64,000 nt of DNA from Diadema antillarum (lineage: Eukaryota). Position numbers and translations under genes: made by a program. Below, piece after piece: positions 5,546 through 62,276 of this stretch (within the stretch, counting starts at the first letter, position 1; every line of letters begins with the position of its first letter). The stretch spans positions 1,240,001 to 1,304,000 of the forward strand of contig NW_027271368.1 of NCBI RefSeq assembly GCF_040938485.1. The letters run 5' to 3'. The notes beneath the pieces were generated by a model that saw only the letters and a program-made list of their open reading frames with translations, did not search any database and was not told where the DNA came from.

Positions 5546-6358
5546 AACATCGTTCCTGTTCAACGACAAGTCGATGATCGTCATACCAATCTGATGAGCC
5601 ATTCGATGTCAACCAGCGCATTCGTCCCATCGGCGTTCACCACATCGTAAAGTCGGGTGCAACGCAGGGAATTAGGCAACTGATTGACGGCTTGAATTCG
5701 TGGTAAAGGTCTTCGAACAAGTGTCATCGGAACTGAACTTGAACTTTGAACTTCGATACATGAATGCTGATACTTCCAGTGCTGATATAGACTATAAGAC
5801 AGCTCAGCCCATCATCGATTCCTCATCCGTGACTTCTGTAACAGTCTCCTGGTTGTGGATACATCGTGATCGTGTGGTATTGATATTGTAATCTCGTACA
5901 AGCTGTATTAGATATTAAAGTACAGTTTATTTCGCTCTGTAGGAAGAGAACTAGAGCAAGAAAGGAGTGCGTGACATAAATCATATGTAACTAGACTATA
6001 TAGCTTTGTAAGAACAGTGAATGTGATTGAGCTATATAATTTGAACTAGATATAGAGCTATATATATAGACTTACTCGAATTCAGAAGTAAATATCGCGT
6101 ATTAACTATATCCTTAGTGTTATACACGTGATATACTATCTGGACAGAATGTGATGTGTATTTACTCTTCGTAAAGAAAAATTGTATTCGCTATAGTACA
6201 ATATTTCAAATCTGTGTTACGAAAGAAAACATTTTCTTTCTCTTTGCCTAGAAATGAAGCGAAGGAAGTGAAAATTAGACACTGTTGACATGGTTGATGT
6301 ATAATAACGATCTCATAGAACTGTTGACGTTAATGCAAAGAGTGTGTTATCTGTCAAT

Positions 6359-9300: not shown

Positions 9301-10946
9301 GAACGAAATTCTTCAGCGAGGTGATGCAGAAAAGGTTCCTGCGGAAGAATTGTCAGTTGAGAACAAGTGGTACATACCACATCATGGGGTATATCACCCA
9401 AAGAAGCCGAACAAAGTGAGAGTCGTTTTCGACTGCAGTGCTCGTTACCAAGGAACCAGTCTAAACGATCATCTCCTACAGGGCCCCGACCTCATCAACC
9501 CTCTGATTGGAGTCCTGTGTAGATTTCGCCAAGGACCCATTGCTTTCACGTGCGATGTGGAAAAGATGTACCATCAGTTCCGCGTCATGAGACAGCATCA
9601 GAACTACCTTCGTTTCTTGTGGTGGGAAGATGGAGATCTTTCCAAGACTCCAGTGGACTATCGAATGAAGGTCCATCTCTTCGGCGCCACTTCCTCCCCA
9701 GGATGTGCCAACTTTGGACTAAAGCAAATCGCGAAGGACCATAAGGAGCTCAGCATGGAAGCTGCTGACTTTCTTACAAGAAACTTCTACGTCGATGACG
9801 GTCTAAAGTGTGAATCTTCTGAAGCAGAAGCCATTGACCTCATTCAGAAGACAGTGAGCATGTGTGCCAAAGGTAACTTGCGTTTGCACAAGTTCGTTAG
9901 CAACAGTCCAGAAGTCACAAGCAGTATCCCTGAGTCTGAACGTGCTGCTGTTGCCAAGACTAGTCTTGAACTCGGCCAGCAAGACGCTACGCCCATTGAA
10001 CGAGCACTCGGCCTACACTGGTGCATCGACTCTGATGAGTTCTGTTTCAGACTTACCCTCAAAGACCGTCCCTTGACAAGACGTGGGATTCTTGCAACAG
10101 TTGCCTCCGTCTACGATCCACTCGGTCTGATTGCACCCTTGGTTCTAGTTGGGAGACAGATTCTCCAGGAGATGTGTAGAAGCAAGATGGACTGGGATCA
10201 TCCTGTTCCTGACGAGCTCCGTCCACGATGGGAAAAGTGGAGACAGGAGATGTTGAAACTCGACAAAGTTAAAATCCCCCGTTGCTTCCAACCACAAGAC
10301 TTTGGAACTCCCAAGGAAGTTGAGCTGCACCACTTCTCAGATGCATCATTGACAGGATATGGTCAGTGTTCCTACGTGCGTCTAAAGAATGAAAGCGGTC
10401 GCGTCCATTGCTCCTTGGTTATGGCAAAGGCACGAGTATGTCCTCTAAAGCCAACAACGATCCCAAGACTAGAACTCCAAGCAGCTACTTGTTCAGTGAA
10501 AATTGCCAATATCCTGGACAATGAACTCGATTATAGTTCTGCCACACACCACTTCTGGACCGACTCACAAGTTGTTCTTGGCTACATACACAATGAGACA
10601 AAGCGCTTCCACATGTACGTTGCCAATCGCGTCGAACGCATCCGTCAGACCTCGCGTCCAGAACAATGGAACTATGTAGCCAGTGCAGAAAATCCTGCAG
10701 ATCATGCATCTAGAGGATTGACGACAGAAGAAATGCTGGCATCAAACTGGCTCACAGGACCCAAGTTTCTTTGGGAGAATGAGATTCCTCCTCAAGACGT
10801 TACTGCAGAAGTCTCTCCAGATGATGTTGAAGTGAAATCTGCCACTGTTCACGCAACACAAGCAAAGACTTTTACGTCCTTCGAAGAAAGGCTGACGCGG
10901 TTCTCCAGCCTTGAAAATGCACTGAAAGCAGTAGCAGTCATAGTAA
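6359..10946 (+). CDS. BEL gag-pol polyprotein, N-terminal part (Gag, protease, RT, RNase H)
   Basis: ORF 6344-10987, first ATG at 6359. Cys/His knuckles (CIFCERQNH, CYGCLSKGHMSKQC, CKICSKRHPTCMH), protease YALLDTMSDTTFI, RT WYIPHHGV/VRVVFDCSA/FYVDD, and RNase H HHFSDAS, IPRLEL, WTDSQVVL, NPADHASRG. The last residues (TQVEIPIETSRNQ) are read-through into the inserted TIR. Confidence 0.95.
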
Positions 10947-11464
10947 CCCAGGTCGAAATTCCCATAGAAACCAGTAGAAACCAGTAGAGACCTTCTACTG
11001 GTTTCTAATGGTTTCCGGATTTGAGTGGTTTCTATGGGAATTTCCAGAGGGTTCCAGTAGGACTCCCATAGAGACCATTAGATTCAACTGGTCAAAAGAC
11101 CAGAACAAACCAATAAAAACCAGTAGAGTCTACTGGTTTTCAAATGGAGTGTTAAATTCAAAGTTAGACCAGTAGAATCCAGAAGAAATCAGTACTGTTT
11201 AATGGTTTCAAGTGGAGAGGGAAACCTGTAGAGAACAGTACAAACCAGAAGAGTCGACTGGTTTCAAAACTGGGTTGAAAAAAGACAAGTCAGACCAGTA
11301 GAAACCAATACAAACCAGCATTTTTTTTTATGCATGTTAAGACATTACTTGTTAACCAGTAAAAACCAACAGGTACCCGTGCAGCCTACTGGTTTGAAGA
11401 TGGCTTTAAAAGAAGGGAAAACCAGTATGAACCAGTACAGACCAGTCACTTTTCTGCATGTATA

Positions 11465-18838: not shown

Positions 18839-20286
18839 AGTGCTCTTACAGGAAAAGGGGTCTGAGCATTGACAAAGTCGAAGCCAAACAAGTAGCAGAG
18901 AGGAATCTCATCTGCGCAATCCAGAAGGAAGCCTTTCGTGAAGAAAGAAAGCAACTCGACAAATCAGATTCCCTAGCCACTTCGAAGTCCAACTCACTGA
19001 GACAGCTTGACCCGTTCCTAGATGACCACGATCTGCTACGGGTGGGAGGTCGGTTGAAGAAGGCAGAAATGATGTATGGTGAAAAACATCCTGTCATCCT
19101 ACCAAAGGATAGCCACCTCTCTAAACTTGTCGCCTTACACTACCATCGAAGAACGGCACATCAAGGAAGGAATCTAACCATCAATGCTATTCGCTCTGGT
19201 GGTTATTGGATCACTGGTTGCAGACGCATTGTCTCTTCTCTTATCAGCAAGTGTGTTCACTGCATCAGATTCCGAGGCAAGCCAAGAGGACAGATGAAAG
19301 CCAATCTACCACAAGACAGAGTAGAACCTTCACCTCCTTTCACATACTGTGGACTCGACTGTTTTGGTCCCTTCACCATCAAGGAAGGGAGAAAGGAGTT
19401 GAAGCGATATGGACTCATTCTTACCTGCATGTCAATGAGGGCTGTACACATAGAAGTGCTAGATGACATGTCTACTGACGGATTCCTCAATAGTTTGAGA
19501 TGTTTCATTGCAATCCGAGGAAACGTTCGCCTCATTCGTTGTGACCAAGGATCAAATTTCATGGGTGCAAAGCACGAACTAAACAAGGGCCTTTCTGAAC
19601 TGGATGAAAATCAAATAGCTACCCAGTTACTGAAGATCAACTGTGAGTTCAGGATGAACCCGCCGGCTTCGAGCCACATGGGAGGAGTCTGGGAGCGGCA
19701 AATCAGGAATGTCAGGAACGTCCTGAATGGTATACTTGATCCGTCGGGCACTCTACTCTCAACTTCTTCTCTGCGAACGTTCCTGTATGAAGCGATGGCA
19801 ATCATCAACAGTAGACCTCTGACCGTCGAAGATCTGGAGTGTCCAGATGGTCCACTCCCATTGACTCCCAATCATGTCCTGACAATGAAATCAGGTCTCG
19901 TATTACCCCCTCCAGGACAATTCGTGAAAGAAGATCTCTATCTCCGAAAGAGGTGGAGGCGTGTCCAATACTTAGTCAACCTCTTTTGGGCACGCTGGAA
20001 GAAAGAGTATCTTCACACCCTACAAGCAAGAAAGACTTCGTCACAGCCACAGCCAAACATTGAAGCAAACGACATTGTCATCTTGCAAAACGAGAGTCTC
20101 TGCAGAACGGACTGGAGAATTGCCAAGGTCATTGAGACCATCTCCAGTGATGATGGTTTGGTTCGAAGAGCGACTCTCCTCATGGCAACTCCAGATCTAG
20201 ACGAGCAAGGCAAACCACTCCACAAAAGAAGTGTAATCGAACGACCTGTTCACAAACTGATCGTTCTCATCAAAAGCTCAGAATAG
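18839..20286 (+). CDS. BEL pol C-terminal part (integrase)
   Basis: Open from 18839 in the same frame as ORF 19042-20286: KCSYRKRGLS...IQKEAF...LDPFLDDHDLLRVGGRL, zinc motif HYH..AHQG..CVHC, DDE core GLDCFGP/RCDQGSNF/GGVWER, C-terminal ERPVHKL. Confidence 0.95.
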
Positions 20287-47803: not shown

Positions 47804-50320
47804 TATATTGTTACAGGCTCAGAGGAGTGTTTTTGAAGATAAGTCATAAACAATCATGTTCGTCAGAATACTTCCGAGTATCCCATCACAGACTGATTAT
47901 GGTTTCTGTTGTTTTGAATACACATATATCATATTAGATACAGAAAGTTTTACAGACAGTTAAAGTTCAACAGGAATGTACCTGAAAGCAGCAATCCCTA
48001 TCGTTATGCTGAAAAGGGAAACATTATCTTAGTATCAGACGGTAGTTCTAGGGGCTGGGAGGGGACCAAAAGAGAAGCAACAATTACTGGCTGATAGCTT
48101 CAACGTACATTGCAATAGGGAAATAAAATTGTAAATACTAACAAATGCAAATGTGTACTTTTATTATTTCGAGGAAATTTACTGAGCATCACACTTTGAA
48201 GAACCTGGCAAAGCACTTAATTTTTTAATTTGATGTTATGCCAGTGTCCGCAAAAGGATTCATACGCGATCGGAAGTCGTCATCAAAATTCTGAATGAAA
48301 ACAAGGCGCGTGGTGATCGAGGGACACAATCTGATCATCGGGCCTAATACTGTTGACTACTGGCTCAGTGCTCTCATTGAAGTCATACGGTCAATTGGAG
48401 GGGGGGGGGGTGGGGGTGATCGGCGTGAGCACGAGTATAAGTCCATGATACGCGATGTGTATATGTAAATGAAATGAAATGAAATAAAATAGATGGTTAT
48501 TATGCTTGTTATTGCTGTGTATGTCGTACACTGATTCTTATTTCCTTATTTTTATAGGATTTCTGAATTTTCTTGAATTAAGAGTCCATTAAAACAATCA
48601 CCCACAGGGGAGTTGATCCATTTGAATGATGGGTCGGGGGAGAGGAAGGGGAGGGCAAAAGTCGGAAGATTATTATGTGCGAGGGAGCGGAGGAGGGTGT
48701 GGGAGATTTTGCATTTCAGCCTGTAATTCAGAGATGAGTGCCCACATTTGGTGAAATATTCGATTTTTGTTTCTATCATGTCTATCGAAAAAGAGGAAGA
48801 AACATTCATATTTAGTGAAATGTGTGTGTGTGTGTGGGGGGGGGATAGACACCCCCTCCCCACTTGAGAGAGATTTTGCATTTTCAGAACTGAAATTCAA
48901 CAATTTTTTATCTGGTGCACACTTTGGATTAAATGTTTGGACACTTTTCTGTCAATAAATGCAAGAAAAAAAATTTCCACCACACATCACGGAATTATTG
49001 GGGGGGGGGGACGACAACATGATATAATGTCCCCCCCCCCCCACGAAGATTGACGCCCCTAACTGCCCCTTGCACCCGTAGGATCGACGCCCCTGATCAT
49101 CCCTGTGTACCCCCCTCCCCCCTTGATGAATAATGACTGAAACATCATCGTTTGCTCAATAATTAAAGAATGGGGGGGGGGGGGGAGTCAATTCTGGCGG
49201 TTTTTGTCTTGTGTTGTTGTTGTTTTTCGTACGTAATTTGTAGATGGTCCCGAGATGCGTTTTCAACATCTGCGAGCGAGCGAAGAGAGCGAGCCTTAAG
49301 GAAATTTTGTATGCAAATCATTTGTTCAGCTCTCACTAGGCTGACTTCCAAACGTCGTGCAATATGCCGAATAACATATTGACACAATCTCATTTCTTCT
49401 CCTTCCATCATTCCATCTATTTTTTTTTTCAATTTCAGGGGGATGTTTGTACAGGCCTTCCCCCTTCTCCATGAGTTGTGGGGGGGGGGATGCATCCCCC
49501 TCCCCATGCATTCTGGTACACATGCCCCGAGTGAAGTACATGTATGTATTGTGGGGTGATGGGAACGCCAGCTGCAACAAAAAGAAGATGACCACGATGA
49601 TGTAATCTCGGGAATTCCCCTTTGTTGTTGCCGTTTTAAACATTACTGTATTTATCATACATAATCCTATCATGTAATTTAGAAATTGATAATGTATGAA
49701 AAATGTAACCATCAATAGAATTTAAAGTTTATTTTGTGACCAAAAATATACATTTTTTAATATTTAATAGATAAAATTAGAAAACTTCTCTACTTTTTCT
49801 TATCTAATTTCGTACGTCAGCCCAGTGCAGGTTCTCGCAAAGAGCATAGGCGCACGACGTACTTCTACTACTGGATGAGTTCTACAGTAGTCAGTGCAGG
49901 CCTCTCCTCTAAATACCAACTACACACACTTACGTACGTGCTGACTGGTATTTTTTATTCCAAAGGCATGATGCATGCTAGCTGGCCGAGTCGTCGATGG
50001 ACGGGAATAGCCTCAGCAACACTATTTACTCACTGAACTGAATTGTCCTGACTGGTACTACTGCTACATGCTGGGACGTATGAAGACAAACACATCAGAT
50101 ATGTGCTTAGAGGGTATAAGTAGATTGTTCTACATGTCTGTACTGTTATTTGACGCCAAATGAATAGGAGGTGATGTTGATACTCTTCATCTAACTTCAT
50201 GAGGCAATCATGAGGAAGTTGGGATAAACTGACCTGGCCTGGTACTGTGGTAGAACCAAATTTAACCCGGAAAGTTCGTTGAATTGAACGTGTGTGAGAG
50301 TTTTGGTTCGATACTTTGCA

Positions 50321-50768
50321 ATGGCTGCAAGCAGTGATGTCAACAGCAGATCTAACTGCAACACAGAAAAGAAGCTAAGATCTGTCGAACGCTGCGAGGA
50401 AATATACCTGCATGTGAAAAATAAATTGAGTAAAACGGACTTCCAGCATTTGCTCTTTTTAAATCAGGAGCATTTGTCAACAAGCGACTATGAACAGTTT
50501 GAAAAAGAATTTTCAGTCTTGCCTTTCATCCTTGCGATGATCAAATGCAACAGGTACCAAAAGGATGATTTCCAATGCCTATGTAAAGATCTTGAAGCGA
50601 TTGAGTTATTCAAGCTTTCCAAGGAAGTAAAGGAGAAGGTTGAGTTACTCAAGCTTTCCAAGGAAGTAAAGGAAAAGGTAACTGCGTCCAGCCCCAACGC
50701 TACGTGTTGGGGCTCAAGCAGTATATCTATGACTGTGTACAAGGAGCGCCCCGCGGTTAAGGAAAAGG
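50321..50768 (+). CDS. Exon encoding a death-effector-domain-like fold (putative first exon of the RLR)
   Basis: YLHVKNKLSKTDFQHLLFL...SVLPFILAM...DDFQCLCKDLEAIELFKLSKEV follows the DED hydrophobic pattern (LS..D...L.FL; L...L..I....L...V). The donor G|GTGAGT is phase 1, matching the acceptor at 52965. Confidence 0.6.
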
Positions 50769-53700
50769 GTGAGTATTTCATGGGAGTCTGGGTCCTAGGT
50801 ACAATTTGAAAGAGTGAGTCTTTCATTGCAAATTTCAATAAACTTTCAATTACAGATTGTCTTAATTTGTGCTTGTATCATCTTTTTAGAGACTTGAGAC
50901 TCTCTTTGAGTCGTTGAGGAAAATTAAAATCATATGTTCTACTAGCCTGACCAGACACTGTGCTGCGCACAGGGTCTGACATGTGTTAGTGTTTCAACGT
51001 TGTAAACGACCGTCACTATTGACGGCAAAATCACATAAAATACCTTTTATTTTGTATGATTTTAAGAGTAATATAATTTGCAACACTTACCTACAGCGTA
51101 TTTTCCTGATGGTTGAGTTGAATTCGGCGTTTTGTTGGTATCCAGACCTTATTGTTGAATTTTTCGGAGTAGATCGTGCGGTTGCATCTTCTCCTTCGAG
51201 AGCTTCACAAAAGCAACAAACTACCACGCATGCGCATTCAGAAGTGGTTGCTTTTTACGTACGCCCGTGCGCCCGTGCGTTTCATGTGTTACGTAAAGCT
51301 TGTAGTAGATCCGCGCGTGCTGCACCGGCAATGATTTGAACTTTTTTAGTCGGGGTCATCCGACTATCTCATCACTTCCGCCCCGACTACCTACGTTGTA
51401 GTATACGAGAGTGAATGCCATTCATATAACACGCAGATGAGGAGTGAAGCAGTAAGGACGTTTACAGACCTGATTTCAGCCATAGATTTCGGTAAGTTTT
51501 AGACGTAATTAAACAAAAAATCGCATACCGGTTATTGAATGATGGTCATAGATTACGATAATTCCTTATATTTTAGTTTTCCACGATTAATAAAGATATT
51601 CATGAAGGAAACAGTGAACGATAACAACGTCCGCGAAGGAATAGAGGTGCAGCGCTGTCGCTTCGCGACAGCGCTGCGTGTAGTTAATGTTCTACTATTA
51701 ATTTTAATACTAACCGCACCAGCGACCCCAACACATTTGTGTAACTGGTTACAGCGGCCCGTGCTGGGGTTAATAAAGGCATAATTCACCATTTGCAGAT
51801 GAAGCAAAAACCCAGCATAGAATGCTCAAAGTGTTTTAAAAAAGTTGTAAAATGTTAGTTGGGGATGGAAAACAACCACTGTAAAAATTTGAATCAGTAA
51901 AAGCGATGTTAAGTATTTTTAAATTAACTATACACAGCCCAGTCGCTGTACGGTCGGGCTATTTTAAATGTGCAAAATGCGAATGAAGAATAGGCCTAGT
52001 TATAATCTGTACAATGTTTCCAGACTAAACCATCTACACTTTAGAACAGTTAGTGGAAAGACTTCCTTTTGAGACAGCCACCCCAATTACACTAGTAGTA
52101 TTACCATAGGGCTCCTACTAAATCAGTGCAGATCTATACAACTCTACCTAGCCTAACCTTGCTTGCGATACGCATGGATGCACGCACTCACTTTTTGGTG
52201 GCTGTCTCAAAAGGAACTCTTGCCCAGTTAGTGAGTAACGGTTTATAGAGAAAAATTGATTGATTCAAGCCCGGAATTTCAACTTTTACAAGCCTGTATG
52301 ACGTCATATTGAGTCTGATTGACTTGAAACTGGGTAGAATTATTCCTTGACATTTAAGACATCCAATCCATGTAAAAATAAAACATAACATTTCTAATAT
52401 TGCATACGAGCTACGCGTGCACATTGGGCAGATCTGCGCGCGCGCGTACGCGTCCGTCAATTTTTTTATCAAATGCTCCAAATGGCCTGAAACGTGTGCA
52501 AAACAATGTTGAGCTCGATCAGAGCATGTTAAAATTTCGATGGGCACTTAAGTTCTAAGAGAGGAGATGGATTTTGAGTAAATGAATAGATAGAGCTTGA
52601 TTTGAGCTATAGGAAAATTTTCATTCGGCTAGCTCTAGATGAATGAGTTGTGATTTGAGATAATGACATCATACTGACATCACACTTGACTTAGCACAAT
52701 GAAACATTAGATCTGTCGTCCTTAGGACATTCATGATACATACAATGTATATGGTATAAGTTTGTTATTGATAGTCAAAGAACTTTTTGAGTTAACCTCT
52801 GCACAAGATGTTTGGGGAAAGAAATAAAGAATAAAGAATTTTGTACATCTATACAGAAGGTGATCAGAGTGGATACTCAGATCACCTATTAAATCTCTGG
52901 AAGGAATGACTTCAATATTCAGTTTATATAAAGTAAAGGTAAATTATTTCATTCTTTCATCCAGCTCAAGAGCTCTCATTGACCGGCCTGGTTCCAAAGG
53001 TTGAGAAACTGACCCTCCAGGAACCTCCAGAGTCATCTGTTCCAGGTCCTCTCCACAGCAAAGACCCTCAGCATGCTCAGCAGGCAGATAAAGCAGATCA
53101 ACTATTCCTACCAGTCCTCAATTTGCCCCCAGAATCTCAGATGAGTTTGGAAAGTCATCAGTTTCTAGCTGAGGTAGAAAGACCAGAGCAAATGCAACAT
53201 CATGACTCATCATATCATCCTGAGAGTGGTAGAGAGGGACTGGCATCTTCCCCAAGAGAAAGACAGGTGTCTGCTCAGCTTCCTTGTCGGCCATCGGAAG
53301 CAGTAGTCCAACATCCTGAAGGTGACCAGTCTATTCCAGCAGAAGAGGGTGCCATGTCTTACGCAGGATCACTGAGAAGTGGAGAAATCTTCAACCGTCC
53401 TTCCCAGAATGCTCCTAGCCACAGTCCAGGTACAGATGAAAGAGGGAGTCTACCAGGTGGCGTTATACATCCTTCAAGCCAACAGAGTTCAGCAAACACA
53501 TGTTTGATTGGCAAATCTTCACCTGCTGTCTTGGGAAATCAAACAGCTCTGAGGGAATCTCTTGGAGTGGCTGTACATCCTTCTGATCAAGAGAGTACAC
53601 TGTCAGCAAACCATGGTCATTCACCATATCCTGGAGATGGAAATGTGAGTCATGACAGTCAGCAGATTCCAGGGGTGAGCCTCGGCAGTTGTCAGACAGC

Positions 53701-56700
53701 GTCAACATTTTCAGGACACCACTCAGATCTGAAGAGCACAGGGAATGCTTCAGTGCAAAACCCATCACTGCCAATTTCCCCACAAAAGTCAAGTCCATTT
53801 TTAGCTAATGTGTCTCTTGAACAAATAGAACAGCTTGTAAATGCTAAAAAACGGGAGTACCAAACAAGTGTTAAAATGAGGCAGGAAAGTGAACTAGATT
53901 TTGATGAACCGAGAGAGAAAAAGAAGCCTGGAAGTTTTCTACCCTCAGATGTTGAGAAAGATGCAGTGTCCACCTATTCTGAACCTCTATGGACAGAAAA
54001 GCCCAAAGAAAAAGACAGAGAGCATGATGATGATGATGAGAAGGATGTTTGTGAAAAGAGAGATGATGATGACATGGAAGTTTCTTTTAAAGACGAACCT
54101 CAAAACTTTGAAATTGAAGGAATAGCTGCCCAAAGTGACGTCGTAGAGTGTGAAGATTTGCAGACAAGTGCAGGTTTCCTTGATGAGGAGGAACATTTGC
54201 CGGAGGTGGAAAGTAAAAGCTTTGAAGCAGTGAAAGAAGAGGGAGAATGGCCAGCCCTTGAAGTAGCTAAGGAACTAAATGAAGCCAAAGAAAAGAAGGA
54301 GAAGGAAGAGGCTGCCATCCAATATGATGAAACCACAGGCATAGAGGTGAATCTCTTTGCCAGAATGAAGGCTGACCCTTCTTCTCTCACCAGCAAGGAC
54401 AGGGACCTCATCCAGAAGCAGATGATGAAGCACTTGGAGAGGAAAGCTGCTCCTCCAGAGAGCAAGGAGCCAAAGGTAGAGTTTGATCCCGATAAGAAAC
54501 TGTTGCCATACCAACACGAATTGGCAGCACCGGGATTGATGGGCTTTAACTACATCATGTGTGCCCCTGTTGGAACGGGAAAGGCGCTTACAGCAGCTGC
54601 CATATGCAATCACCAGAGGAAAATTGCTATCGCAAAGAATGAAGAAAAACCTTACAAGTCTTTGTTCGTTTCGAGTGGGCAGTCTGTCAGTGACCGCCAC
54701 AGGGATGCATTTCAGAATATTTTCCCTCCGGGAGCAGTGTTTGTCCTTGAAAGCCCATCCCAGTTCAAGGAAGTCTTTGACCTGCCCAGCGTTCACGTCG
54801 TGATGTTGACAGCTGAGCAGCTTAGCCAAGTCCTGAAGGAAAGACAGATAGCTTTCATTGATTTGACCACTGTGGTCATTGATGAATGTCATCTGATTGC
54901 TACCAAGCATCCCTTCAATGACATCACCAAGTACTACCTGGCTGAGAAGAAGGACTTGCTGGCGAGGAAGGCTCCCCGAGGGGCATGGACTCTGGGAAGA
55001 CCATATGGTGGAATTTCTTTCATCATAGGTAATTTCATCATGTATGATTTTTCTTTTTGAGTGTCTGTACTTTTAGTTTAAAAATGTTCTCTCTATAGCA
55101 CCCATTTATGTGTCACATACTTAAGCGAGCCTACATGTACAGATGAGCAAAAACCCAGCTTTAATGCCTCAATATTGTTGTTAAACGTTAGGGATGAAAA
55201 TAACCGACATCAAAACATTAATCAGTAAAATCAATGTTAACTGTAAAATTTGAACTATGATAATTAGTAAATCCATTTCTAGAATTAGCATCTTCAGTTA
55301 TGTTTTATCAAGAAAATTGGTGATTTCTCCTTCCATTTGCGGCTTTATTGCAAATTTGTATGTTTTGTTAGGATGTTATACAATTTGTAAGTGAACTATA
55401 CATCTACATCAAATGTGATAATTCTAACATTTTTTTTGTAATCACTGCTACCAATGATAAATAATGGCTTTAATACAATTTCTGTGGAGCTTTCAGAGGA
55501 GGTACCCATACATGGAGTATCGAATGTTAGGACTGAACTTCACTCAGATACTATGTCTCATCTTGTGACAAAATTCATGTGGAAAATGGGGTTGGGTTTA
55601 GGTTGATAAGGATTTTAAAAAATGCCTTCCACCCTTGAAAAATCCTGGGTGATTTCTCCTTTTTTTCTTTTCTTTGTGTGGTACTGATTAACACTGCCAA
55701 AAAATTTATTGTTGAAAAAAAAGAATTTTTCTATCCTAAGATACTAGAAACATTGCCTTGAGTAACTTTTAACACATTAAGCCCAATTATGTTTAGATAT
55801 CCCTAAAGATTATTGGCAGCATTGTGAAGGCAATAGACCGAGAATACAAAATCTGTCCTGTTCAATCTTGCTAGGCCTGACACCAAACCTGGGGGCAAAC
55901 TTGCAGTGCTTCACCCGTGAGTTCATGGTCCGGCAGTGCGGTCTCCTGGACAGCAAGGGAATCCGGCGTGTGGAGTCCGTGGACAACCTGCGAGAGATGC
56001 TGAAGGTCAACAAACCACCAGAAGTGGACACTATGCTACTCACGTCACGTGCCCAGTCTACCATCAACAGTGTCTTCAGGTAAGTATATCAACATTTGTT
56101 AGTTTTTTTTTTTTTTTTGGGGGGGGAGGGGAAGGGTTTTTGGTACCAGGGTATGGATTGCTGATGATTATACTAGGTGAGAGGGGTAATATGCATTTTA
56201 TATGAATGGTCTATACACTGTCAGATTCCTTGTGCAAAGACACTTTGGCCCACATTCACGAAGGTGGTACAAATGAAACCATGGTTTAAACCGGCCCATG
56301 GACAAAAACCATGGAGCGCCAAGTGTCGCAAGGAATATTTCGTTACGAAATTGGTCATTTCGTCAACAAAATAACCGTTTTGTTACGAAATCAGTCATTT
56401 CATGGACGAAATGTTCATTTAGTTACAAAATGTTGTCATTTCATTCCAAAATAATAATTTCATCGACGAAATGACTGATTTCGTAACGAAATATTCCAGG
56501 TGACACTTGACGCTCCATGGTTTAAACTATAGTTTCATTTGTGCCACCTTCATGAATTCGGGCCATAGAGAGAAGTTGTTATGGGAGTTACATGTATAGA
56601 TCAGCTGTGCCATGCATTTTAATCAAAACTTACATTTTATTCCGTGGAGATTATGTGGCTACCCAAATATTTGAAGTCATGTCAATACAACTTAACTCAT

Positions 56701-59700
56701 TGTCTTGACTACAGTTTTCTGTTGTTGCCATTTTGAAATGCACACCTTAACCAATAATCGAGTGCATCAATCATATAGGCCCTACATACAAACATATGAG
56801 AGCGATTTCTCAGTGCCTAGCGACAGTGTATAACCAGTGCTTGTAGAAACCTGAAATGTTGGTTGTTAACATTTGTTTGTTTGTTTGTTTGTTTTTTGTA
56901 ACTATCTGTCAGAAGGTAAAACTACTGGCTTAAATTGCATGTTTTGAAGCCCCACAATCAGAGATACGCATCTTACATGGGTAGTGTAGTGATGTCATGT
57001 AACCTTGTATTGGATGTCTCATCATAATGTCCCAAACTACATAGGTCAGTTCTGGAGAAGCTCATGTCTTCCATGGAGGAGCGATACTCTCCAGACGGGG
57101 GCCTCCAGGGGGACACGCCCCGAAAGGGCACCAAGGAGTACCGGGCCTGGATCCAACCCAAGCGCATGCTGGCCAAGCAGCTGGGAGAAGTGGACCGTTA
57201 CTTCCCCGCCACCTACCTGGTCCTGCTGAACGACGCCCTGTGTGTGCACGAGGACCTGCGCTGCAAGGAGGCAATGAAGTTCTTGAGCTCGGAAGATGGG
57301 AAGCTGCAGGCAGAGAAAGGCTTTGCTGCATCAACGGGTGAGAAAATCTTAGTAGCCACTTCCTTTAATGGGCGAGCATTAAATACAAAGAATATTTTGA
57401 ATTCACATTCATTTTGTTTAATGGGATATGTGAATACGGTATTTTCAAATGAATGTACCTACTATGTTGAAATGTTTAATATCATGCAGGGTGTAGCACA
57501 TTTTAACTTCCAAAATTGATATTTTTCCATGCTATGTTTTTATCTGGTGGTTGTCTGTTACACTGTTTGAATGATGTTTAGAAATTACGTGGGACTGAGA
57601 GTCAGGGGAAAATTGATGAGATGAAAGTCAGATGATCAGGGTTTAATAAGTTTAGGGTGTGTACAGTTCTGGTCGAGGTGAAGATTTAGCTTTTAACGTT
57701 TTGCGAGATATTCAGAAACCATTCTATGAGATGTCAAAGAGCATGCAGTTCTAAGGGGTATCAAAAGTTTATTTGATGAAAATCGGTTTTGAAATGGCTG
57801 AGATATCCAAAAACAAGGTGAAACAAAGAGATCCTAATAAAGTTGTGGCATGTCGCCTTTTATTATTAGCACTTTTTTTTGGATATCTCGGCCATTTGAA
57901 AACCAATTTTCATCAAATAAACGTTGAATCCTTCTTGAAATTACATGCTCTTTCATATTTCATAAAAGAGGCTTTCCATTATCTCACTTTGGAATGTTCA
58001 AAACATGAATCCCTACCTCAACCAGTACTGTACAGTCCCTTTAAGGTACTGCAAATACTGTGAGTTGGACCCATGAGTGCTTTCCACATGAGAAGGAAAT
58101 GAAATGGTGTTCAAATTTTGATATCAATACAAAATATTTCTCTCCGAAATTTGTATTAAGATCAAAAGTAAAACACCATTTTTAGTTGAATTTCCCAACA
58201 CAGATGAGCTTCTACGCTATTATGAGAAGGAAATGTTCAGATTGATCTTCTTCTTTTTTTCCCCCAAATTTCCCGGAACATGGGATTTGTTCAGAAGTGA
58301 TAAGAATTTTCTCTCTCTGATTGGTTTTAGGCAAGGACTGCCATAAGATGTTTGAGGAACAGAAGTTTGAGCTGATGAGACTAGTGAAGGAGGACTCTCC
58401 AGGTCTCTCCCCAAAGCTCTGGTGTCTGGCTCAGAAACTGGCTGAGATCTACGACAAGGATGCTCCTGAAGCAGGTAATTGTTAGGATAGCCATTGGAGT
58501 GTTTGTCCCTTGTGTATTGGTTCATCCAAAATGTGACTGACACTTTACTTTTTACGATTTCATGGTATGTCAATGTGTTGCTCCTTGACTTGTTTGTTAG
58601 TATTTTCCCTGTGCTTTGTTAATACTTCCTCGCTTTGCTGCTTTAATTGTTTTCTTTTATTTCATAGGAAGACCATTATTGTCCTCCCATTTGCCCCTTT
58701 AATAGTGTCCTTTACAGCATGTGTGTGAGTGTTTGTGGGGGGATGTTTGTATGTATGTATGTTCTCTTGTCAGTTTGCATTACTGTCATTGTGTCTACTT
58801 GTGACCTGCTATTGCTACAACAAAAGGATTCTAAAGTTGGGGGAAGACAATTTTTTGAAAATGACACATGACATTATTCCCTCACTCTTCTGCTTTAATT
58901 TTGTATGTAACACGACTCGTAGAAGTACTTGGTTGTGGAGATATTGGTGATTTTAAGAGACCATGTTGAGTGGTGTAGGAAATCAACATTTTGAGAATGC
59001 AGCCTTCAAAGTTTTCCTTCTGACGCAATCGTGATCAAGAGGAGGTAAGACAGTTTTCGCCGCTTGACAATAGGTCTGCTCATAGCAACCTCTGCGATGT
59101 TCATTCAGGCTTATCGCCAGCGGTCTATGCACGACCAGTCTGTAACCAGGGTGCCATGCACTGACCAATAAGATCACTCCCTCGTTGCTATGGATGGAGT
59201 CTATCTGCAGCCCTAAATCCAAATCTTCAGACACATTTCTGTTCTGTTGATAGTCAGAAAATCATGGCCCAGAAAAACTCTAATTTCTTGCCTTTCCTTT
59301 GATCATTTAGCTTTTGAAAAAAACAACACCTTAAACTAAAGACAGTACAGTCAGTCCTTCCTTAGTGACCACCTGTCTATAGCATCCACTTGCTGTATGC
59401 GGTCACTGTAATTCTCTTCAAGAGAAAAGACGTGTTACAAACCCTGTGCTTAGTGGCCACCTGTATAATGCGGCCAGCAGCCATCAATTTTGTTTCCTGC
59501 GGTAGGTATTGGCCTTTGTATAGCAATCACAAACCCATACAGAGCCAGAGCAAAGCTGATAATTCAGCAAGTTTTTTGCTTTGCAGCTATGCTGGTTACG
59601 CATAGCAAATAGTTTTAATGATCACCACTTTTGCATTTACTCATCATTCAGGTATCATAATGAACTCACCAGCTTGCTGTTTGCACACTCAGTGTGCAAT

Positions 59701-62276
59701 CGCTCAATCAATAACTTCATTGTTCAATGCGTGAAGCATGTGCATTGGTATGATGCACTTATAGATGTGATGATACATGTACATGTATGCAATACAGACA
59801 AAATGTCAGATAGCCTGTCTATAACAGCTACCCATCTATAATGGCCACTCTTTTTGCCTCCCTTTGGTGGCTGCTATATACAGATTTGACTGTATTTCAG
59901 TTTTAGTTTGGAACATCAAATTTTCCTGTTTGATACTGAACTGTCAATTCTTCTTGATTCAACATGAAGCTGTATGCAAACTTAATGTCCTCACAAAGGC
60001 ATATAAGCTTCCTTGATTTAGAGTCGTAAATATTGGCAGCCCTGCTCATATCTACATGTAATTAATTAAACTCAAAGCATCCCCTGAGGTCTACCAGCTT
60101 TTACCGTTAACATGCATGAATATAAACATTCATCTCATCTAACACACTACCCACTATTTTATTTTTTCATCATGGCAACAGGTATAATCCTTGTCAGATC
60201 CAGTGCCATAGCAACCCTCCTCGTCAACATCATCAATAGCAACAACATCACCTCATCCAAGGGGATCAAGGCAGTCCAGCTGAGCGACCCAGACGAGGGA
60301 GAGATGGAGGATCGAGACTCCGTGGTATCACAGCAGATAAAGATCTTCCAAGACATTCAGCAAGGTAAAGTACTTAAAGTTTACTCATACTACTCAATGT
60401 CTTAACCCGTTGAGGACGAGTCCTGAGTATACTCGGGCAAACGTCTATGGAAAATGCGTGTTGCAGCAAAATCAAACCATCCTGAGCGGGTGAAGACAAA
60501 ACCGCCAAATCAAACCAATCCCCCCCCCCCCCCCCCACCCAAAAAAAAAAAAAAAAACAAACAAAAAAAAACAAAAAAAAAAACATGTTCACTAGCCTTC
60601 ATCTTTATCTTTGGTACCCAGAGTATGATATAAAGTGGTAGAGTATGATTCACAATTTGAACATCAGGGAGAGTTTAACATGCAGGATCATTGTTTAGGG
60701 TTGTGGGCATGCAGTGTAGCTGTGTAGGCATTGGGAAACTCAACAAACTCTTGTGTCTGCTTGCCACCAGTATACCACAAGCCATAGTTTTCTTTTCTGT
60801 ATTTCTTAACCTGTTAAAGATGAGTCCGGAGAATACTCGGGCAGCTGTCTATGGGAAATGCATGTTATAGCAAAATCAGTCCGTCGATCTGTGACAGGTT
60901 ATAGGACAAGTTCACTCACGTTGTGTGGATTGAGTGAATGCAGCAATGTTAGTTGGACATGACAAATTCATTCAAAAGTTACAGGTAGTGTGAGTTTTTC
61001 AAATTGTAGTGCCCCCACCACTGGATGGGAAGACAAAAATGTTGAGGGAATGTGCACTTTTCTTTTAAAAAAAATTCTGAAACTGTCTTTAAATTTTTCT
61101 TTATTAGTTATTCATATATGTATGCAACATCAAAACCTGTCGTAATCCTTAATTTTTCTGTATTTGTTTTACATACATGTATGTGACATCATAAACTGTG
61201 ATAGTCTTCTCATGCAGCAGTGACTGCACAGAAACTTTAAATATTTGTCAGTTTTGAATGAATTGTCTGATTTTCCTCAAACTTTCCATGTTATCAACTA
61301 ACATTACTGCATTCAGTCAGTCCACACATACTGTATGTATGGATGGGTGAATTTATCCGTGAATAATAGTGCCAGTAAGTTGTCCATGTTCTCTTCTTGC
61401 TGTTACAGGGAAAGCCAATTTGATAGTCAGTACTGACTTTGAGCAGACTGGTCTGGAGCTCCCTTCTTGCCACTTTGTGATTCGCTACAACCTGGTCGAG
61501 GAGGAAGTGAGAACGGTGCAGCGTGCAGCGAGGGCTGGAGCTGGGGAAGGCCTGTGCTTCCTGATTGCTGAAAAGTATGCTTTTTATCTTAATTTGCAGG
61601 GGAGTTATGGGCCAAGGGGTGATGAACAGGAGGGGGGGGGGGGGGGGAGAGGGGGAAAGGGGAAAGATGGAGGAGAGATTGGGTTGTTGATCAGTGCTGA
61701 TGTGGTTGATGAATGTGATTTCAGGCAATAGCTCTCAGATCTTTTATAGTGATAAAATGTTACTAACTAGGAGCCTTCTCAAAGTGATTCGGAAGAATTT
61801 TTGTTTCTTTACTAGCCATGACATGCTTCAAACATCTTTTAACCCATTTAGGATGAGTCCCAAGTATACTTGGGCAAGTGTCTATAGGAAATGGGTGTTG
61901 TAGCAAAATCAGCCCATCCTCAATGGGTTAAAAGAGACGATGAAAGTCACTTTGATATGACAGGCTAGGTTGACCCGTACCAGACTGAATTCTGAAATGC
62001 CCATGACTTAATACGCAGGCCACCAGGTTCCCATATGGAACGGGTAAAAAAACACGAATCAATGTTTAAACATATGATTACATACCATGTTACCACATGA
62101 ATAGTGATATAGTGAAATTTTACAGCCTCGACTTTGCTTCCACCATGTGCAGGTACTCAAACTTAGCCTACGAGGAACAGAGGAAGCGAGATAACTTGAA
62201 GAGCTTGGAGGGCAATTTAAAGGTCCTGAATGAGATGGACCCCAAGAAGTGGTACGACTTGGTGGAGGACAAACAG
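50321..62276 (+). CDS. RIG-I-like receptor (DExD/H helicase, RLR family), 3'-incomplete in window
   Basis: Exons 50321-50768 (DED-like; link inferred), 52965-55028, 55875-56079, 57045-57337, 58331-58474, 60182-60364, 61409-61574, 62126-62276; all GT-AG and phase-consistent. RLR hallmarks: PYQHELA Q-motif, IMCAPVGTGK, VVIDECH, IIGLT, Hel2i (GTKEYRAWI...LNDALCVHEDLRCKEAMKFL), SPKLWCL, CHFVIRYN, and a pincer helix. No CTD exon found before 64000. Confidence 0.88.
51227..51384 (+). promoter_or_regulatory. CpG-rich housekeeping-type promoter
   Basis: NRF1-like CGCATGCGCA (51227-51236), ETS CACTTCCG (51373-51380) overlapping GC box CCGCCCC (51378-51384), just upstream of a small exon. Confidence 0.55.
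51437..51491 (+). CDS. Putative alternative short first exon of the RLR (MRSEAVRTFTDLISAIDF)
   Basis: ATG at 51437, 18 codons + G, consensus donor G|GTAAGT, phase 1, compatible with the acceptor at 52965. Confidence 0.5.
56246..56565. mobile_element. Harbinger-like MITE containing a nested ISL2EU-like MITE (56313-56516)
   Basis: Outer TIR TGGCCCACATTCACGAAGGTGGTACAAATGAAAC / inverted copy ending GGGCCA. Inner element GGAGCGCCAAGTGTC...GACACTTGACGCTCC has an AT TSD inside a CCATGG site. Confidence 0.7.
57654..58040. mobile_element. Kolobok-like MITE
   Basis: AGGGTGTGTACAGTTCTGGTCGAGG ... CCTCAACCAGTACTGTACAGTCCCT followed by TTAA; body homologous to 42903-43283. Confidence 0.7.
59348..59892. 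mobile_element. TA-flanked Tc1/mariner-type MITE
   Basis: TA|CAGTCAGTCCT ... AGATTTGACTG|TA with internal GGCCACCTGT-type repeats. Confidence 0.6.
60406..61927. mobile_element. Three copies of an ~85-bp TTAA-flanked mini-MITE (60406-60490, ~60810-60898, 61843-61927)
   Basis: The best copy is TTAA|CCCATTTAGGATG...CATCCTCAATGGG|TTAA; the body GAGTATACTCGGGCA...CTATGGGAAATG...AGCAAAATCAG is shared. Confidence 0.75.

What the first reader, a model, noticed from the sequence alone, without database searches (positions are those of the whole stretch)
54500..61545. RIG-I-like helicase with multiple degenerate ATPase motifs: candidate pseudo-helicase or decoy RLR
Seen: the Q motif (PYQ), Walker A lysine and DECH (54881-54892) are kept. 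However, motif I is GTGKA (54578-54586; Mg-binding T/S lost), motif III is GLTPN (RLR: GLTAS), motif V is STDFEQTGLE (RIG-I: ATSVADEGID), and motif VI is QRAARAG (61519-61539; RIG-I QTRGRGR, MDA5 QARGRAR), losing two of three arginines. All exons remain open and in phase. Established: these motifs couple ATP hydrolysis to RNA binding in SF2/RLR helicases. Inference: a maintained but ATPase-poor RLR acting as a scaffold, decoy or regulator, i.e. an invertebrate pseudoenzyme immune receptor.
Basis: partly seen in the sequence, partly recalled or inferred. Interest (0 to 1): 0.75.

Follow-up and report, generated by a model that had tools for sequence, protein, structure and literature searches.

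The report
Sea-urchin RNA sensor with degenerate ATPase
A sea-urchin (Diadema antillarum) relative of the antiviral RNA sensor RIG-I has lost several of the near-invariant residues that normally burn ATP, yet has been kept intact by selection across distant sea-urchin lineages, so it is probably a working RNA-binding receptor or regulator that no longer depends on normal ATP hydrolysis.

Summary
The window (Diadema antillarum, contig C480) carries an intact multi-exon RIG-I-like receptor (RLR) gene. It keeps the Q motif, the Walker A Lys and DECH. It has GKA instead of GKT, GLTPN instead of GLTAS, a remodelled motif V and a degenerate motif VI.

The same or similar changes occur in the second haplotype, in D. 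setosum, in Lytechinus pictus, in Strongylocentrotus purpuratus and in one unnamed echinoid-like contig. Among about 142 other RLR-family cluster representatives the Walker A Thr is present in 140.

The gene is not decaying. dN/dS against D. setosum is 0.13 overall and 0.08 for exons 2-9. The AlphaFold model matches RIG-I/MDA5/LGP2 helicase-CTD structures (TM 0.7-0.78), and the four zinc cysteines of the CTD are kept.

It is an echinoid-specific, long-branched sister of canonical death-effector-domain (DED) RLR paralogues. Its Hel2 domain is much less conserved than in those paralogues, while its CTD is equally conserved.

"ATPase-poor" remains an inference. "Decoy" is not favoured over "ATP-independent sensor", because the gene carries an N-terminal DED exon. 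That exon was already noted by the scan on this same window.

Verdict: a new variant of a known kind, of moderate interest.

The parts
50321..50638 (+). First coding exon: ATG plus a death-effector-domain (DED)-like six-helix module. It may extend to 50677 through a 39-bp tandem duplication.
   Evidence: tblastn of P0004. Pfam DED E=7.6e-5, 23 bits, below the cut-off. The S. purpuratus orthologue scores 36 bits, above the cut-off. The AF2 model has six helices and pLDDT 76. Top Foldseek hits are all caspase-8/cFLIP/FADD DEDs, TM up to 0.87 by target, but E-values are weak, at best 0.06.
52965..54238 (+). 5' part of the large exon: about 420 aa of low-complexity, fast-evolving linker with an acidic stretch.
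   Evidence: Open frame from 52943. Alignment to P0004, P0005, P0006 and P0002 shows little conservation. It is 86% identical in DNA to the other haplotype up to about 53613.
54239..54499 (+). Clade-specific conserved pre-helicase segment of about 87 aa (WPALxVA ... YDxxTGIE ... DLIxKQM).
   Evidence: Conserved in Diadema, Lytechinus, Strongylocentrotus and P0002. Absent from the canonical echinoid, sea-star and hemichordate relatives.
54500..55028 (+). Hel1 domain. Q motif 54506-54514; motif I APVGTGKA 54563-54586 (Walker A Thr replaced by Ala); motif II DECH 54881-54892; motif IIa.
   Evidence: Pfam DEAD and ResIII. Alignment to RIG-I and MDA5 chains. Column counts.
55875..56079 (+). Exon with motif III GLTPN (55875-55888 plus the split codon at 55028) and the start of Hel2i.
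57045..57337 (+). Hel2i insertion-domain exon.
   Evidence: Pfam RIG-I_C (PF18119), weak on the exon alone and above the cut-off on the whole protein..
58331..58474 (+). Exon covering the end of Hel2i and the start of Hel2.
60182..60364 (+). Hel2 exon with motifs IV and IVa.
   Evidence: No amino-acid difference from D. setosum against 8 synonymous differences.
61409..61574 (+). Hel2 exon with motif V STDFEQTGLE (61429-61458) and motif VI QRAARAG (61519-61539).
   Evidence: Pfam Helicase_C. Alignment to MDA5. Column counts. pN 0.008 against pS 0.175.
62153..62276 (+). Pincer (bridging helix) exon. The last two coding exons (zinc-binding CTD and acidic/Arg-Gly tail) lie beyond the window at L009:1712-1954 and L009:2586-3089.

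Best explanation
This is an intact, selectively maintained gene for an echinoid-specific paralogue of the DED-type RIG-I-like receptors.

Its layout is: DED, a linker of about 500 aa, a clade-specific pre-helicase segment, Hel1, Hel2i, Hel2, pincer, a zinc CTD and an acidic tail.

After duplication from a canonical DED-RLR in the sea-urchin lineage, the helicase core went through a burst of change. That burst replaced residues that coordinate Mg-ATP and couple hydrolysis to domain closure:
- the Walker A Thr;
- motif III Ala-Ser;
- motif V Glu/Gly/Asp;
- motif VI Gln/Gly/Arg.

The adenine-binding Gln, the P-loop Lys, DECH, the RLR fold and the CTD were kept.

Inferred mechanism: the protein still clamps duplex RNA through the CTD and the helicase ring, and may still bind nucleotide. 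It turns ATP over very slowly or not at all. It would therefore lack the ATP-driven dissociation/proofreading cycle of canonical RLRs and act as a long-dwelling, ATP-independent RNA-binding receptor or regulator. Its output, or its sequestering activity, would go through DED-DED contacts rather than CARD-MAVS.

Shown here: gene structure, motif states, clade distribution, purifying selection, fold. Inferred: reduced ATPase activity, RNA binding, DED signalling.
For: - Motif states and coordinates.
- The same or similar replacements are present in the other haplotype (P0004), D. setosum (P0001), L. pictus (P0005, P0011), S. purpuratus (P0006, P0018) and P0002.
- The lost residues are near-invariant in about 130-145 other RLR representatives. 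Of 58 columns that are at least 85% conserved in the family, 17 are changed in all clade members and 14 in some.
- Canonical paralogues in the same genome keep APTGSGKT.
- dN/dS is 0.13 overall and 0.08 for exons 2-9, at dS 0.12.
- Tree: the clade is sister (SH-aLRT 99) to the canonical echinoid paralogues, inside the DED-RLRs. Its stem branch is 1.51, against 0.12 for the sister stem.
- Across the same Diadema-Lytechinus split, Hel2 is 41% identical in this clade and 73% in the canonical paralogue. Motif VI is 29% against 76%. The CTD is 60% against 61%.
- The AF2 model has pLDDT 85 and matches RNA-bound RIG-I, MDA5, LGP2 and DRH-1 over about 720 columns with TM 0.7-0.78. The lowest-confidence core segments are the motif V and VI loops.
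- The four CTD zinc cysteines are conserved.
- ATPase-deficient RIG-I mutants in motifs I and II remain RNA-binding and signalling-competent (PMC6299088).
Against: - No biochemical or expression data were available.
- The strict retention of Gln, Gly-Lys and D-E-C-H across distant echinoid lineages argues that the nucleotide site is still used. A water or a neighbouring residue could replace the Thr hydroxyl.
- The camarodont orthologues keep Gly-Arg and carry Lys residues in motif VI.
- Motifs I, III and V are remodelled but then conserved within the clade (67-70% identity). That pattern looks like a changed function rather than a lost one.
- In the window's own haplotype, the DED exon's canonical phase-1 splice donor is altered. 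DED coupling in this allele is therefore unproven.
Confidence: 0.6

Rival explanations
1. It is still an active RNA-dependent ATPase/translocase that uses a non-canonical active site. In that case the motif changes alter kinetics or specificity but do not abolish hydrolysis.
For: The Q motif, Gly-Lys of the P-loop and DECH are invariant in every clade member. Motifs I, III and V are conserved within the clade after remodelling. The camarodont motif VI keeps G-R and adds Lys. Purifying selection on the motif-bearing exons is strong.
Against: Several independent hydrolysis determinants are lost together: the Walker A Thr in all members, motif V Glu and Asp in all, and the last Arg of motif VI in all. 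Each is at least 95% conserved elsewhere in the family. The residue replacing the Thr is Val in two lineages, and Val cannot ligate Mg. Hel2 and motif VI have drifted between lineages.
Confidence: 0.25
2. It is a pure decoy or dominant-negative regulator. It would sequester RNA or DED partners without signalling.
For: The ATPase motifs are degenerate. In the window haplotype the DED exon may not splice in frame to the helicase exon, which would give a DED-less, LGP2-like product. NCBI's D. setosum model also starts inside the large exon.
Against: A DED exon precedes the gene in D. antillarum C31, D. setosum, S. purpuratus and on the P0002 contig. Human ATPase-deficient RIG-I variants are hyperactive, not inert. 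Nothing in the sequence separates sequestration from signalling.
Confidence: 0.2
3. The helicase scaffold has been repurposed for a non-RNA role, for example as a protein-binding platform like the vertebrate Dicer helicase domain. In that case RNA sensing is lost too.
For: Several positions conserved across the family outside the ATP site are also changed, including motif Ia-region Gln-Gln and the Pro-Gln before motif III. There is a new conserved pre-helicase segment. Vertebrate Dicer helicase lacks ATP hydrolysis and serves as a docking site (abstracts of PMC10159624 and PMC7384945).
Against: The CTD is as conserved as in the canonical paralogue and keeps its zinc site. The Thr of motif Ic, the Lys-x-His-Pro of motif IIa and the overall RNA-clamp architecture are retained.
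Confidence: 0.1
4. It is a young pseudogene in neutral decay, or the substitutions are sequencing or assembly errors.
For: None beyond the degenerate motifs themselves.
Against: All exons are open. dN/dS is 0.08-0.13 at dS 0.12. The motif states are identical in two haplotype contigs and in D. setosum, and related in three further lineages. The clade predates the Diadema-camarodont split.
Confidence: 0.02

Closest known systems
DED-containing RIG-I-like receptors of invertebrate deuterostomes and lophotrochozoans (orthogroup described by Tassia et al. 2021, PMC8662601; DED-RLRs in PMC8998645)
   Same: N-terminal DED in place of CARDs, a DExH helicase with Hel2i, pincer and zinc CTD. The gene nests inside this group, sister to canonical echinoid members and next to the Asterias, Glandiceps and Branchiostoma DED-RLRs.
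   Different: Those members keep APTGSGKT, GLTAS/GLSAS, ATDIxQEGLD and QxxGRAR. This clade has lost the Walker A Thr and other near-invariant residues. It has a very long stem branch, a linker of about 500 aa, a private pre-helicase segment and an acidic tail.
LGP2 / DHX58 (the name NCBI gives the Diadema proteins)
   Same: RLR helicase plus CTD. A regulatory role for an RLR is conceivable.
   Different: LGP2 has no death-fold domain and keeps canonical ATPase motifs (it appears in the canonical set). This gene is not an LGP2 orthologue (tree).
Human RIG-I Singleton-Merten variants C268F (motif I) and E373A (motif II)
   Same: RLRs with a crippled ATPase site that still bind RNA. This is a functional analogy for an RLR that lacks ATP-driven proofreading (PMC6299088).
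   Different: Those are single pathogenic mutations causing constitutive CARD signalling. Here many motif residues have changed and been fixed over long evolutionary time, the output domain is a DED, and activity is untested.
Vertebrate Dicer helicase domain
   Same: It belongs to the same helicase family as the RLRs and has lost ATP hydrolysis in evolution while being retained (abstract of PMC10159624).
   Different: Dicer lost activity despite well-conserved ATPase motifs. Here the motifs themselves are degenerate.
Pseudohelicases such as Utp25 (PMC9539457) and, from my own knowledge, the C-terminal cassette of Brr2
   Same: An SF2 helicase fold retained under selection with non-canonical catalytic motifs.
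   Different: They belong to unrelated families with roles in ribosome or spliceosome assembly. They are not immune receptors.

Membership tests
RIG-I-like receptors (RLR) | SF2 DExD/H helicase core with Hel1 and Hel2 | tested here: met
   Pfam DEAD, ResIII and Helicase_C are above their cut-offs on the window exons and on P0001/P0004. The best PDB sequence matches are RIG-I and MDA5.
RIG-I-like receptors (RLR) | Hel2i insertion domain between Hel1 and Hel2 | tested here: met
   PF18119 scores 26.5-31.3 bits against a cut-off of 23.2. The AF2 model has a helical insertion, and full-length structural matches give TM 0.7-0.78.
RIG-I-like receptors (RLR) | Pincer plus C-terminal zinc-binding RNA-recognition domain (PF11648) | tested here: met
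   The Pfam score is below the cut-off in Diadema (19.4 against 25.6) and above it in the L. pictus orthologue (27.2). The four zinc cysteines and conserved Gly/Trp/Phe align with canonical CTDs. The model superposes on helicase-CTD structures.
RIG-I-like receptors (RLR) | Canonical ATPase motifs (I GxGKT, III TAS/TAT, V with E-G-x-D, VI QxxGRxR) | tested here: not met
   The gene has GKA, TPN, TDFEQTGLE and QRAARAG. The residues concerned are 95-99% conserved in the rest of the family.
RIG-I-like receptors (RLR) | RNA-stimulated ATPase activity and dsRNA binding | not testable with these tools
   Biochemistry is required.
DED-type RLR orthogroup | N-terminal death effector domain encoded upstream of the helicase | tested here: inconclusive
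   The fold and homology of the exon are supported, and a DED ORF also precedes P0002. In the window haplotype, however, the phase-1 donor used in C31 and D. setosum is altered, and no RNA reads were available to show the join.
DED-type RLR orthogroup | Phylogenetic placement within the group | tested here: met
   The clade is sister to the canonical echinoid paralogues (SH-aLRT 99). Together they are sister to the Asterias DED-RLR (97).
Pseudoenzyme (pseudo-helicase) | Loss of residues essential for catalysis | tested here: inconclusive
   The Mg-ligand Thr, motif V Glu/Asp and the last Arg of motif VI are lost. The P-loop Lys, the Asp-Glu of DECH and the Q-motif Gln are retained.
Pseudoenzyme (pseudo-helicase) | Maintained by purifying selection rather than decaying | tested here: met
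   dN/dS is 0.08-0.13. Orthologues are present across echinoid orders.
Pseudoenzyme (pseudo-helicase) | Measured absence of catalytic activity | not testable with these tools
   An ATPase assay is required.

The most novel reading that the evidence does not exclude
Sea urchins have kept, across their major lineages, an RLR that works without ATP-driven proofreading. RNA clamped by the conserved CTD and helicase ring would be held in a long-lived complex. Selectivity would be supplied by the private pre-helicase segment and by the acidic linker and tail acting as nucleic-acid-mimicking gates. Output would go through DED-DED assembly, as in caspase-8/FADD, directly to cell death. This would be a natural counterpart of the human gain-of-function RIG-I/MDA5 disease alleles, tamed by other means.
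Probability: 0.25. Interest if true: 0.75.

Novelty: new variant of a known kind. Interest (0 to 1): 0.55.

Why it matters
What ATP hydrolysis does in RLRs is still argued: proofreading against self RNA, translocation, filament turnover or signalling. The debate rests mainly on engineered or disease mutants.

A natural RLR lineage under purifying selection with a remodelled ATP site, sitting next to canonical paralogues in the same genomes, offers a ready-made comparison pair for biochemistry.

It also shows that automatic names such as 'DHX58-like' or 'RIG-I-like' hide functionally divergent receptors in the expanded echinoderm immune repertoire. Finally, it links to the proposed, still untested, DED-dependent RLR pathway of invertebrates.

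Tried and rejected
Two haplotype contigs and D. setosum served instead.
Exons were searched by reference, and the database proteins P0001 and P0004 (99% identical in the helicase) stood in for the full-length product. dN/dS was summed over per-exon codon alignments, dropping split codons.
- The DNA of the P0002 contig could not be fetched, so motifs V and VI of that lineage are unknown.
- A PDB sequence search with the pincer/CTD part gave only a marginal MDA5 hit (E=0.014). CTD membership rests on the alignment and the fold.
- Literature searches found no paper on this clade's motif degeneration and none naming LOC592613. Absence from that library does not prove it is undescribed.
- The pseudogene and sequencing-error readings were rejected.
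- I did not use the third word-index protein search. The exhaustive representative search already showed no non-echinoid member between the clade and its canonical sisters.
Full report
**Where the window is from.** The window is G000:C480:1240001-1304000 of a 1.75-Gb, 2963-contig assembly. A near-identical second copy lies on contig C31. The organism is therefore the sea urchin D. antillarum. C480 and C31 are most simply the two haplotypes of an unpurged diploid assembly, because the other RLR loci also come in pairs (C969/C246).

**Observation.** The motifs are read directly, with the frame fixed by exon-by-exon alignment to the D. setosum orthologue.
- PYQ at 54506-54514.
- A-P-V-G-T-G-K-A at 54563-54586.
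- DECH at 54881-54892.
- G-L-T-P-N across the 55028 / 55875-55888 junction.
- S-T-D-F-E-Q-T-G-L-E at 61429-61458.
- Q-R-A-A-R-A-G at 61519-61539.

HMMER alignments to solved structures put these opposite PTGCGKT/PTGSGKT and DECH of RIG-I/MDA5 and opposite ATTVAEEGLD and QARGRAR of MDA5. Pfam finds DEAD/ResIII, the Hel2i domain (PF18119) and Helicase_C on the exons.

**Gene structure.** The gene is larger than the reported span.
- A first exon with the ATG at 50321 encodes a DED-like module.
- A large exon (52965-55028) encodes a disordered linker of about 500 aa and Hel1.
- Six further exons lie in the window: 55875-56079, 57045-57337, 58331-58474, 60182-60364, 61409-61574 and 62153-62276.
- The last two exons (CTD and an acidic/Arg-Gly tail) lie 1.7-3.1 kb beyond the window (L009).

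No exon contains a stop or a frameshift relative to D. setosum.

**How unusual the motif states are.** An exhaustive HMMER search of 1.84 billion cluster representatives gave 846 relatives. I aligned the 154 proteins in hand and counted residues at the motif columns. Outside the focal clade the counts are:
- Walker A Thr: T in 140 of 142.
- Motif III Ala: A in 143 of 145.
- Motif V: Glu 126, Gly 127 and Asp 127, each of 132.
- Motif VI: Gln 130/131, Gly 131/132, last Arg 127/132.

The focal clade departs at all of these. It keeps the Q-motif Gln, Gly-Lys, D-E-C-H, the motif V Thr and the middle Arg of motif VI. Of 58 columns that are at least 85% conserved in the family, 17 are changed in every clade member, 14 in some, and 27 are kept.

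**Who shares it.** These motif states are not peculiar to this assembly.

| Source | Motif I | Motif III | Motif V | Motif VI |
|---|---|---|---|---|
| C31 haplotype (P0004) and D. setosum (P0001) | same as window | same | same, except S/C before T-D-F-E-Q | same |
| L. pictus (P0005, P0011) | SRTGKA | GLTPH | TDFEQVDLE | HWSGRKK |
| S. purpuratus (P0006, P0018) | SRTGKV | GLTPH | TDFEQVDLE | HWSGRRK |
| Unnamed ENA contig (P0002) | TRTGKV | not known | not known | not known |

The Thr is thus lost in all, and the first P-loop Gly is also lost in three lineages. Motifs I, III and V were remodelled and then held. Motif VI differs between Diadema and the camarodonts.

Paralogues in the same D. 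antillarum genome keep APTGSGKT and DECH. These are the tandem RLRs already noted by the scan as s1-224641.

**Selection.** Nei-Gojobori counts were summed over per-exon codon alignments of the window against D. setosum (locus L012). They give dS 0.121 and dN 0.016, so dN/dS is 0.13. For exons 2-9, dN/dS is 0.08. The motif V/VI exon has 1 non-synonymous against 7 synonymous differences, and the motif IV exon has 0 against 8. This excludes a decaying pseudogene.

**Phylogeny and rates.** In an IQ-TREE analysis of 34 helicase-CTD sequences, the clade is sister (SH-aLRT 99) to the canonical echinoid paralogues P0008/P0009/P0010. The two together are sister (97) to the Asterias DED-RLR. The Glandiceps and Branchiostoma relatives also carry strong Pfam DEDs.

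The clade's stem branch is 1.51 substitutions per site, against 0.12 for the sister stem. No non-echinoid protein falls between the clade and its canonical sisters in the exhaustive search.

The history is therefore a duplication in the sea-urchin lineage, then a burst of change, then constraint. From my own knowledge, the diadematoid-camarodont split is of the order of 200 million years or more, which sets a minimum age.

**Where constraint was relaxed.** Identities across the same Diadema-Lytechinus split:

| Region | Focal clade | Canonical paralogue |
|---|---|---|
| Hel1 | 58% | 69% |
| Hel2i | 47% | 57% |
| Hel2 | 41% | 73% |
| Motif VI window | 29% | 76% |
| Pincer | 54% | 47% |
| CTD | 60% | 61% |

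The RNA-end-recognition domain is thus as constrained as in a normal RLR. The domain that supplies the arginine finger and closes on ATP has been freed.

**Fold.** An AlphaFold2 model of P0001:215-930, built with a 51-sequence alignment, has mean pLDDT 85.4 and pTM 0.76. Foldseek's best PDB matches are RNA-bound RIG-I, MDA5, LGP2 and C. elegans DRH-1 helicase-CTD structures, aligned over about 720 columns with TM 0.66-0.78.

The lowest-confidence stretches inside the core are the motif V loop (model residues 474-477, below 50) and the motif VI region (blocks at 55-63). This fits their departure from the family profile, but it is partly a consequence of that profile and should not be over-read.

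The CTD keeps the two Cys pairs of the zinc site, with a six-residue insertion in the second pair, plus conserved Gly, Trp and Phe.

**DED.**
- The first exon scores below Pfam's DED cut-off in Diadema (23 bits). The S. purpuratus orthologue passes (36.0 against 35.9).
- The model is a six-helix bundle. Its top Foldseek hits are all caspase-8/cFLIP/FADD DEDs: rmsd 1.3-1.4 Å over about 80 residues and TM 0.86-0.87 normalised on FADD, though with weak E-values.
- The P0002 contig also has a DED ORF 1.4 kb upstream of the large exon.
- DED-RLRs are a published orthogroup, proposed to signal through DED-dependent apoptosis (PMC8662601; see also PMC8998645).

**Mechanism.** It is established knowledge that the hydroxyl of the Walker A Ser/Thr ligates Mg2+. 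It is also established that motif V/VI residues, including the arginine finger, contact the gamma-phosphate and couple hydrolysis to closure of the two RecA-like domains in SF2 helicases.

In RIG-I, ATP hydrolysis provides kinetic proofreading against self RNA. The motif I and II variants C268F and E373A are ATPase-deficient yet RNA-binding and constitutively signalling. In C268F, K270 pairs with motif V E702 and mimics the ATP-bound state (PMC6299088; PMC4517655 abstract).

In the focal clade the Thr next to that Lys and the motif V Glu are both gone. I therefore infer (about 0.6) an RLR that still clamps RNA, and perhaps nucleotide, but has little or no ATP turnover.

Whether it signals through its DED or acts as a brake cannot be decided from sequence. 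The DED and the precedent of hyperactive ATPase-dead RIG-I make 'decoy' no more likely than 'ATP-independent sensor'.

The main rival (about 0.25) is a still-active enzyme with a non-canonical site. The invariant Gln, Gly-Lys and DECH, and the post-remodelling conservation of motifs I, III and V, argue for that rival.

**Limits.**
P0001 and P0004 were used instead.
- Literature searches found no description of this motif degeneration. That holds only for the library searched.

**Verdict.** This is a new variant of a known kind (DED-type RLRs), worth a biochemical comparison with its canonical paralogue. Interest is moderate.

Noticed in passing
window 50609-50680 and 52943-52975: In this haplotype the DED exon's splice donor differs from C31 and D. 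setosum. They have ATG G|GTGAG (phase 1); the window has AAG G TT GAG. Only phase-0 donors remain (AAG|GTTGAG at 50638/39, or AAG|GTAACT at 50677/78 after a 39-bp tandem duplication). Joined to the acceptor at 52964/65, these would hit a stop after five codons. An in-frame join would need the next AG (exon start 52973). The allele may therefore make a DED-less product.
   Followed up: partly
window 48000-53613 versus G000:C31 (L013): The 5' part of the gene (upstream region, DED exon, first ~650 bp of the large exon) is only 79-87% identical in DNA between the two haplotype contigs, apart from one 70-bp stretch at 93%. The rest of the compared stretch, to 56200, is 97% identical. DED-exon dS between haplotypes is 0.28 with dN/dS 0.3-0.5. 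This suggests very old alleles, or gene conversion, at the signalling end of an immune gene.
   Followed up: partly
window 54239-54499: A segment of about 87 aa just before the helicase (WPALxVA ... YDxxTGIE ... DLIxKQM) is conserved in all members of the degenerate clade and absent from canonical echinoid, sea-star and hemichordate relatives. It has no Pfam match and its function is unknown.
   Followed up: partly
L009:2850-3089 (beyond the window): After the CTD the protein ends in a tail of about 95 aa with a poly-Asp run and Arg-Gly-rich repeats. The tail is also present in the L. pictus orthologue and absent from canonical paralogues. It could act as a nucleic-acid-mimicking autoinhibitory element.
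   Followed up: no
protein P0083 (JGI metagenome contig, 606 aa): This is an unrelated RLR-like representative with an even more degenerate core (GSDKA in motif I, DQCH in motif II, no recognisable motif VI). Loss of ATPase motifs in RLR paralogues may have happened more than once.
   Followed up: no
window 2145-3992, 6344-10987, 19042-20286: Long ORFs upstream of the gene are retrotransposon remnants: reverse transcriptase, Pao/BEL peptidase with DUF1759, and integrase with DUF5641. They were observed only.
   Followed up: partly
window 60400-60495, 60805-60885, 61838-61935: Three diverged copies of a short interspersed repeat (shared core '...gagtcc..g.ata.tcgggca...tctatgg.aaatg.gtgtt..agcaaaatca...') sit in the introns flanking the motif V/VI exon.
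   Followed up: no
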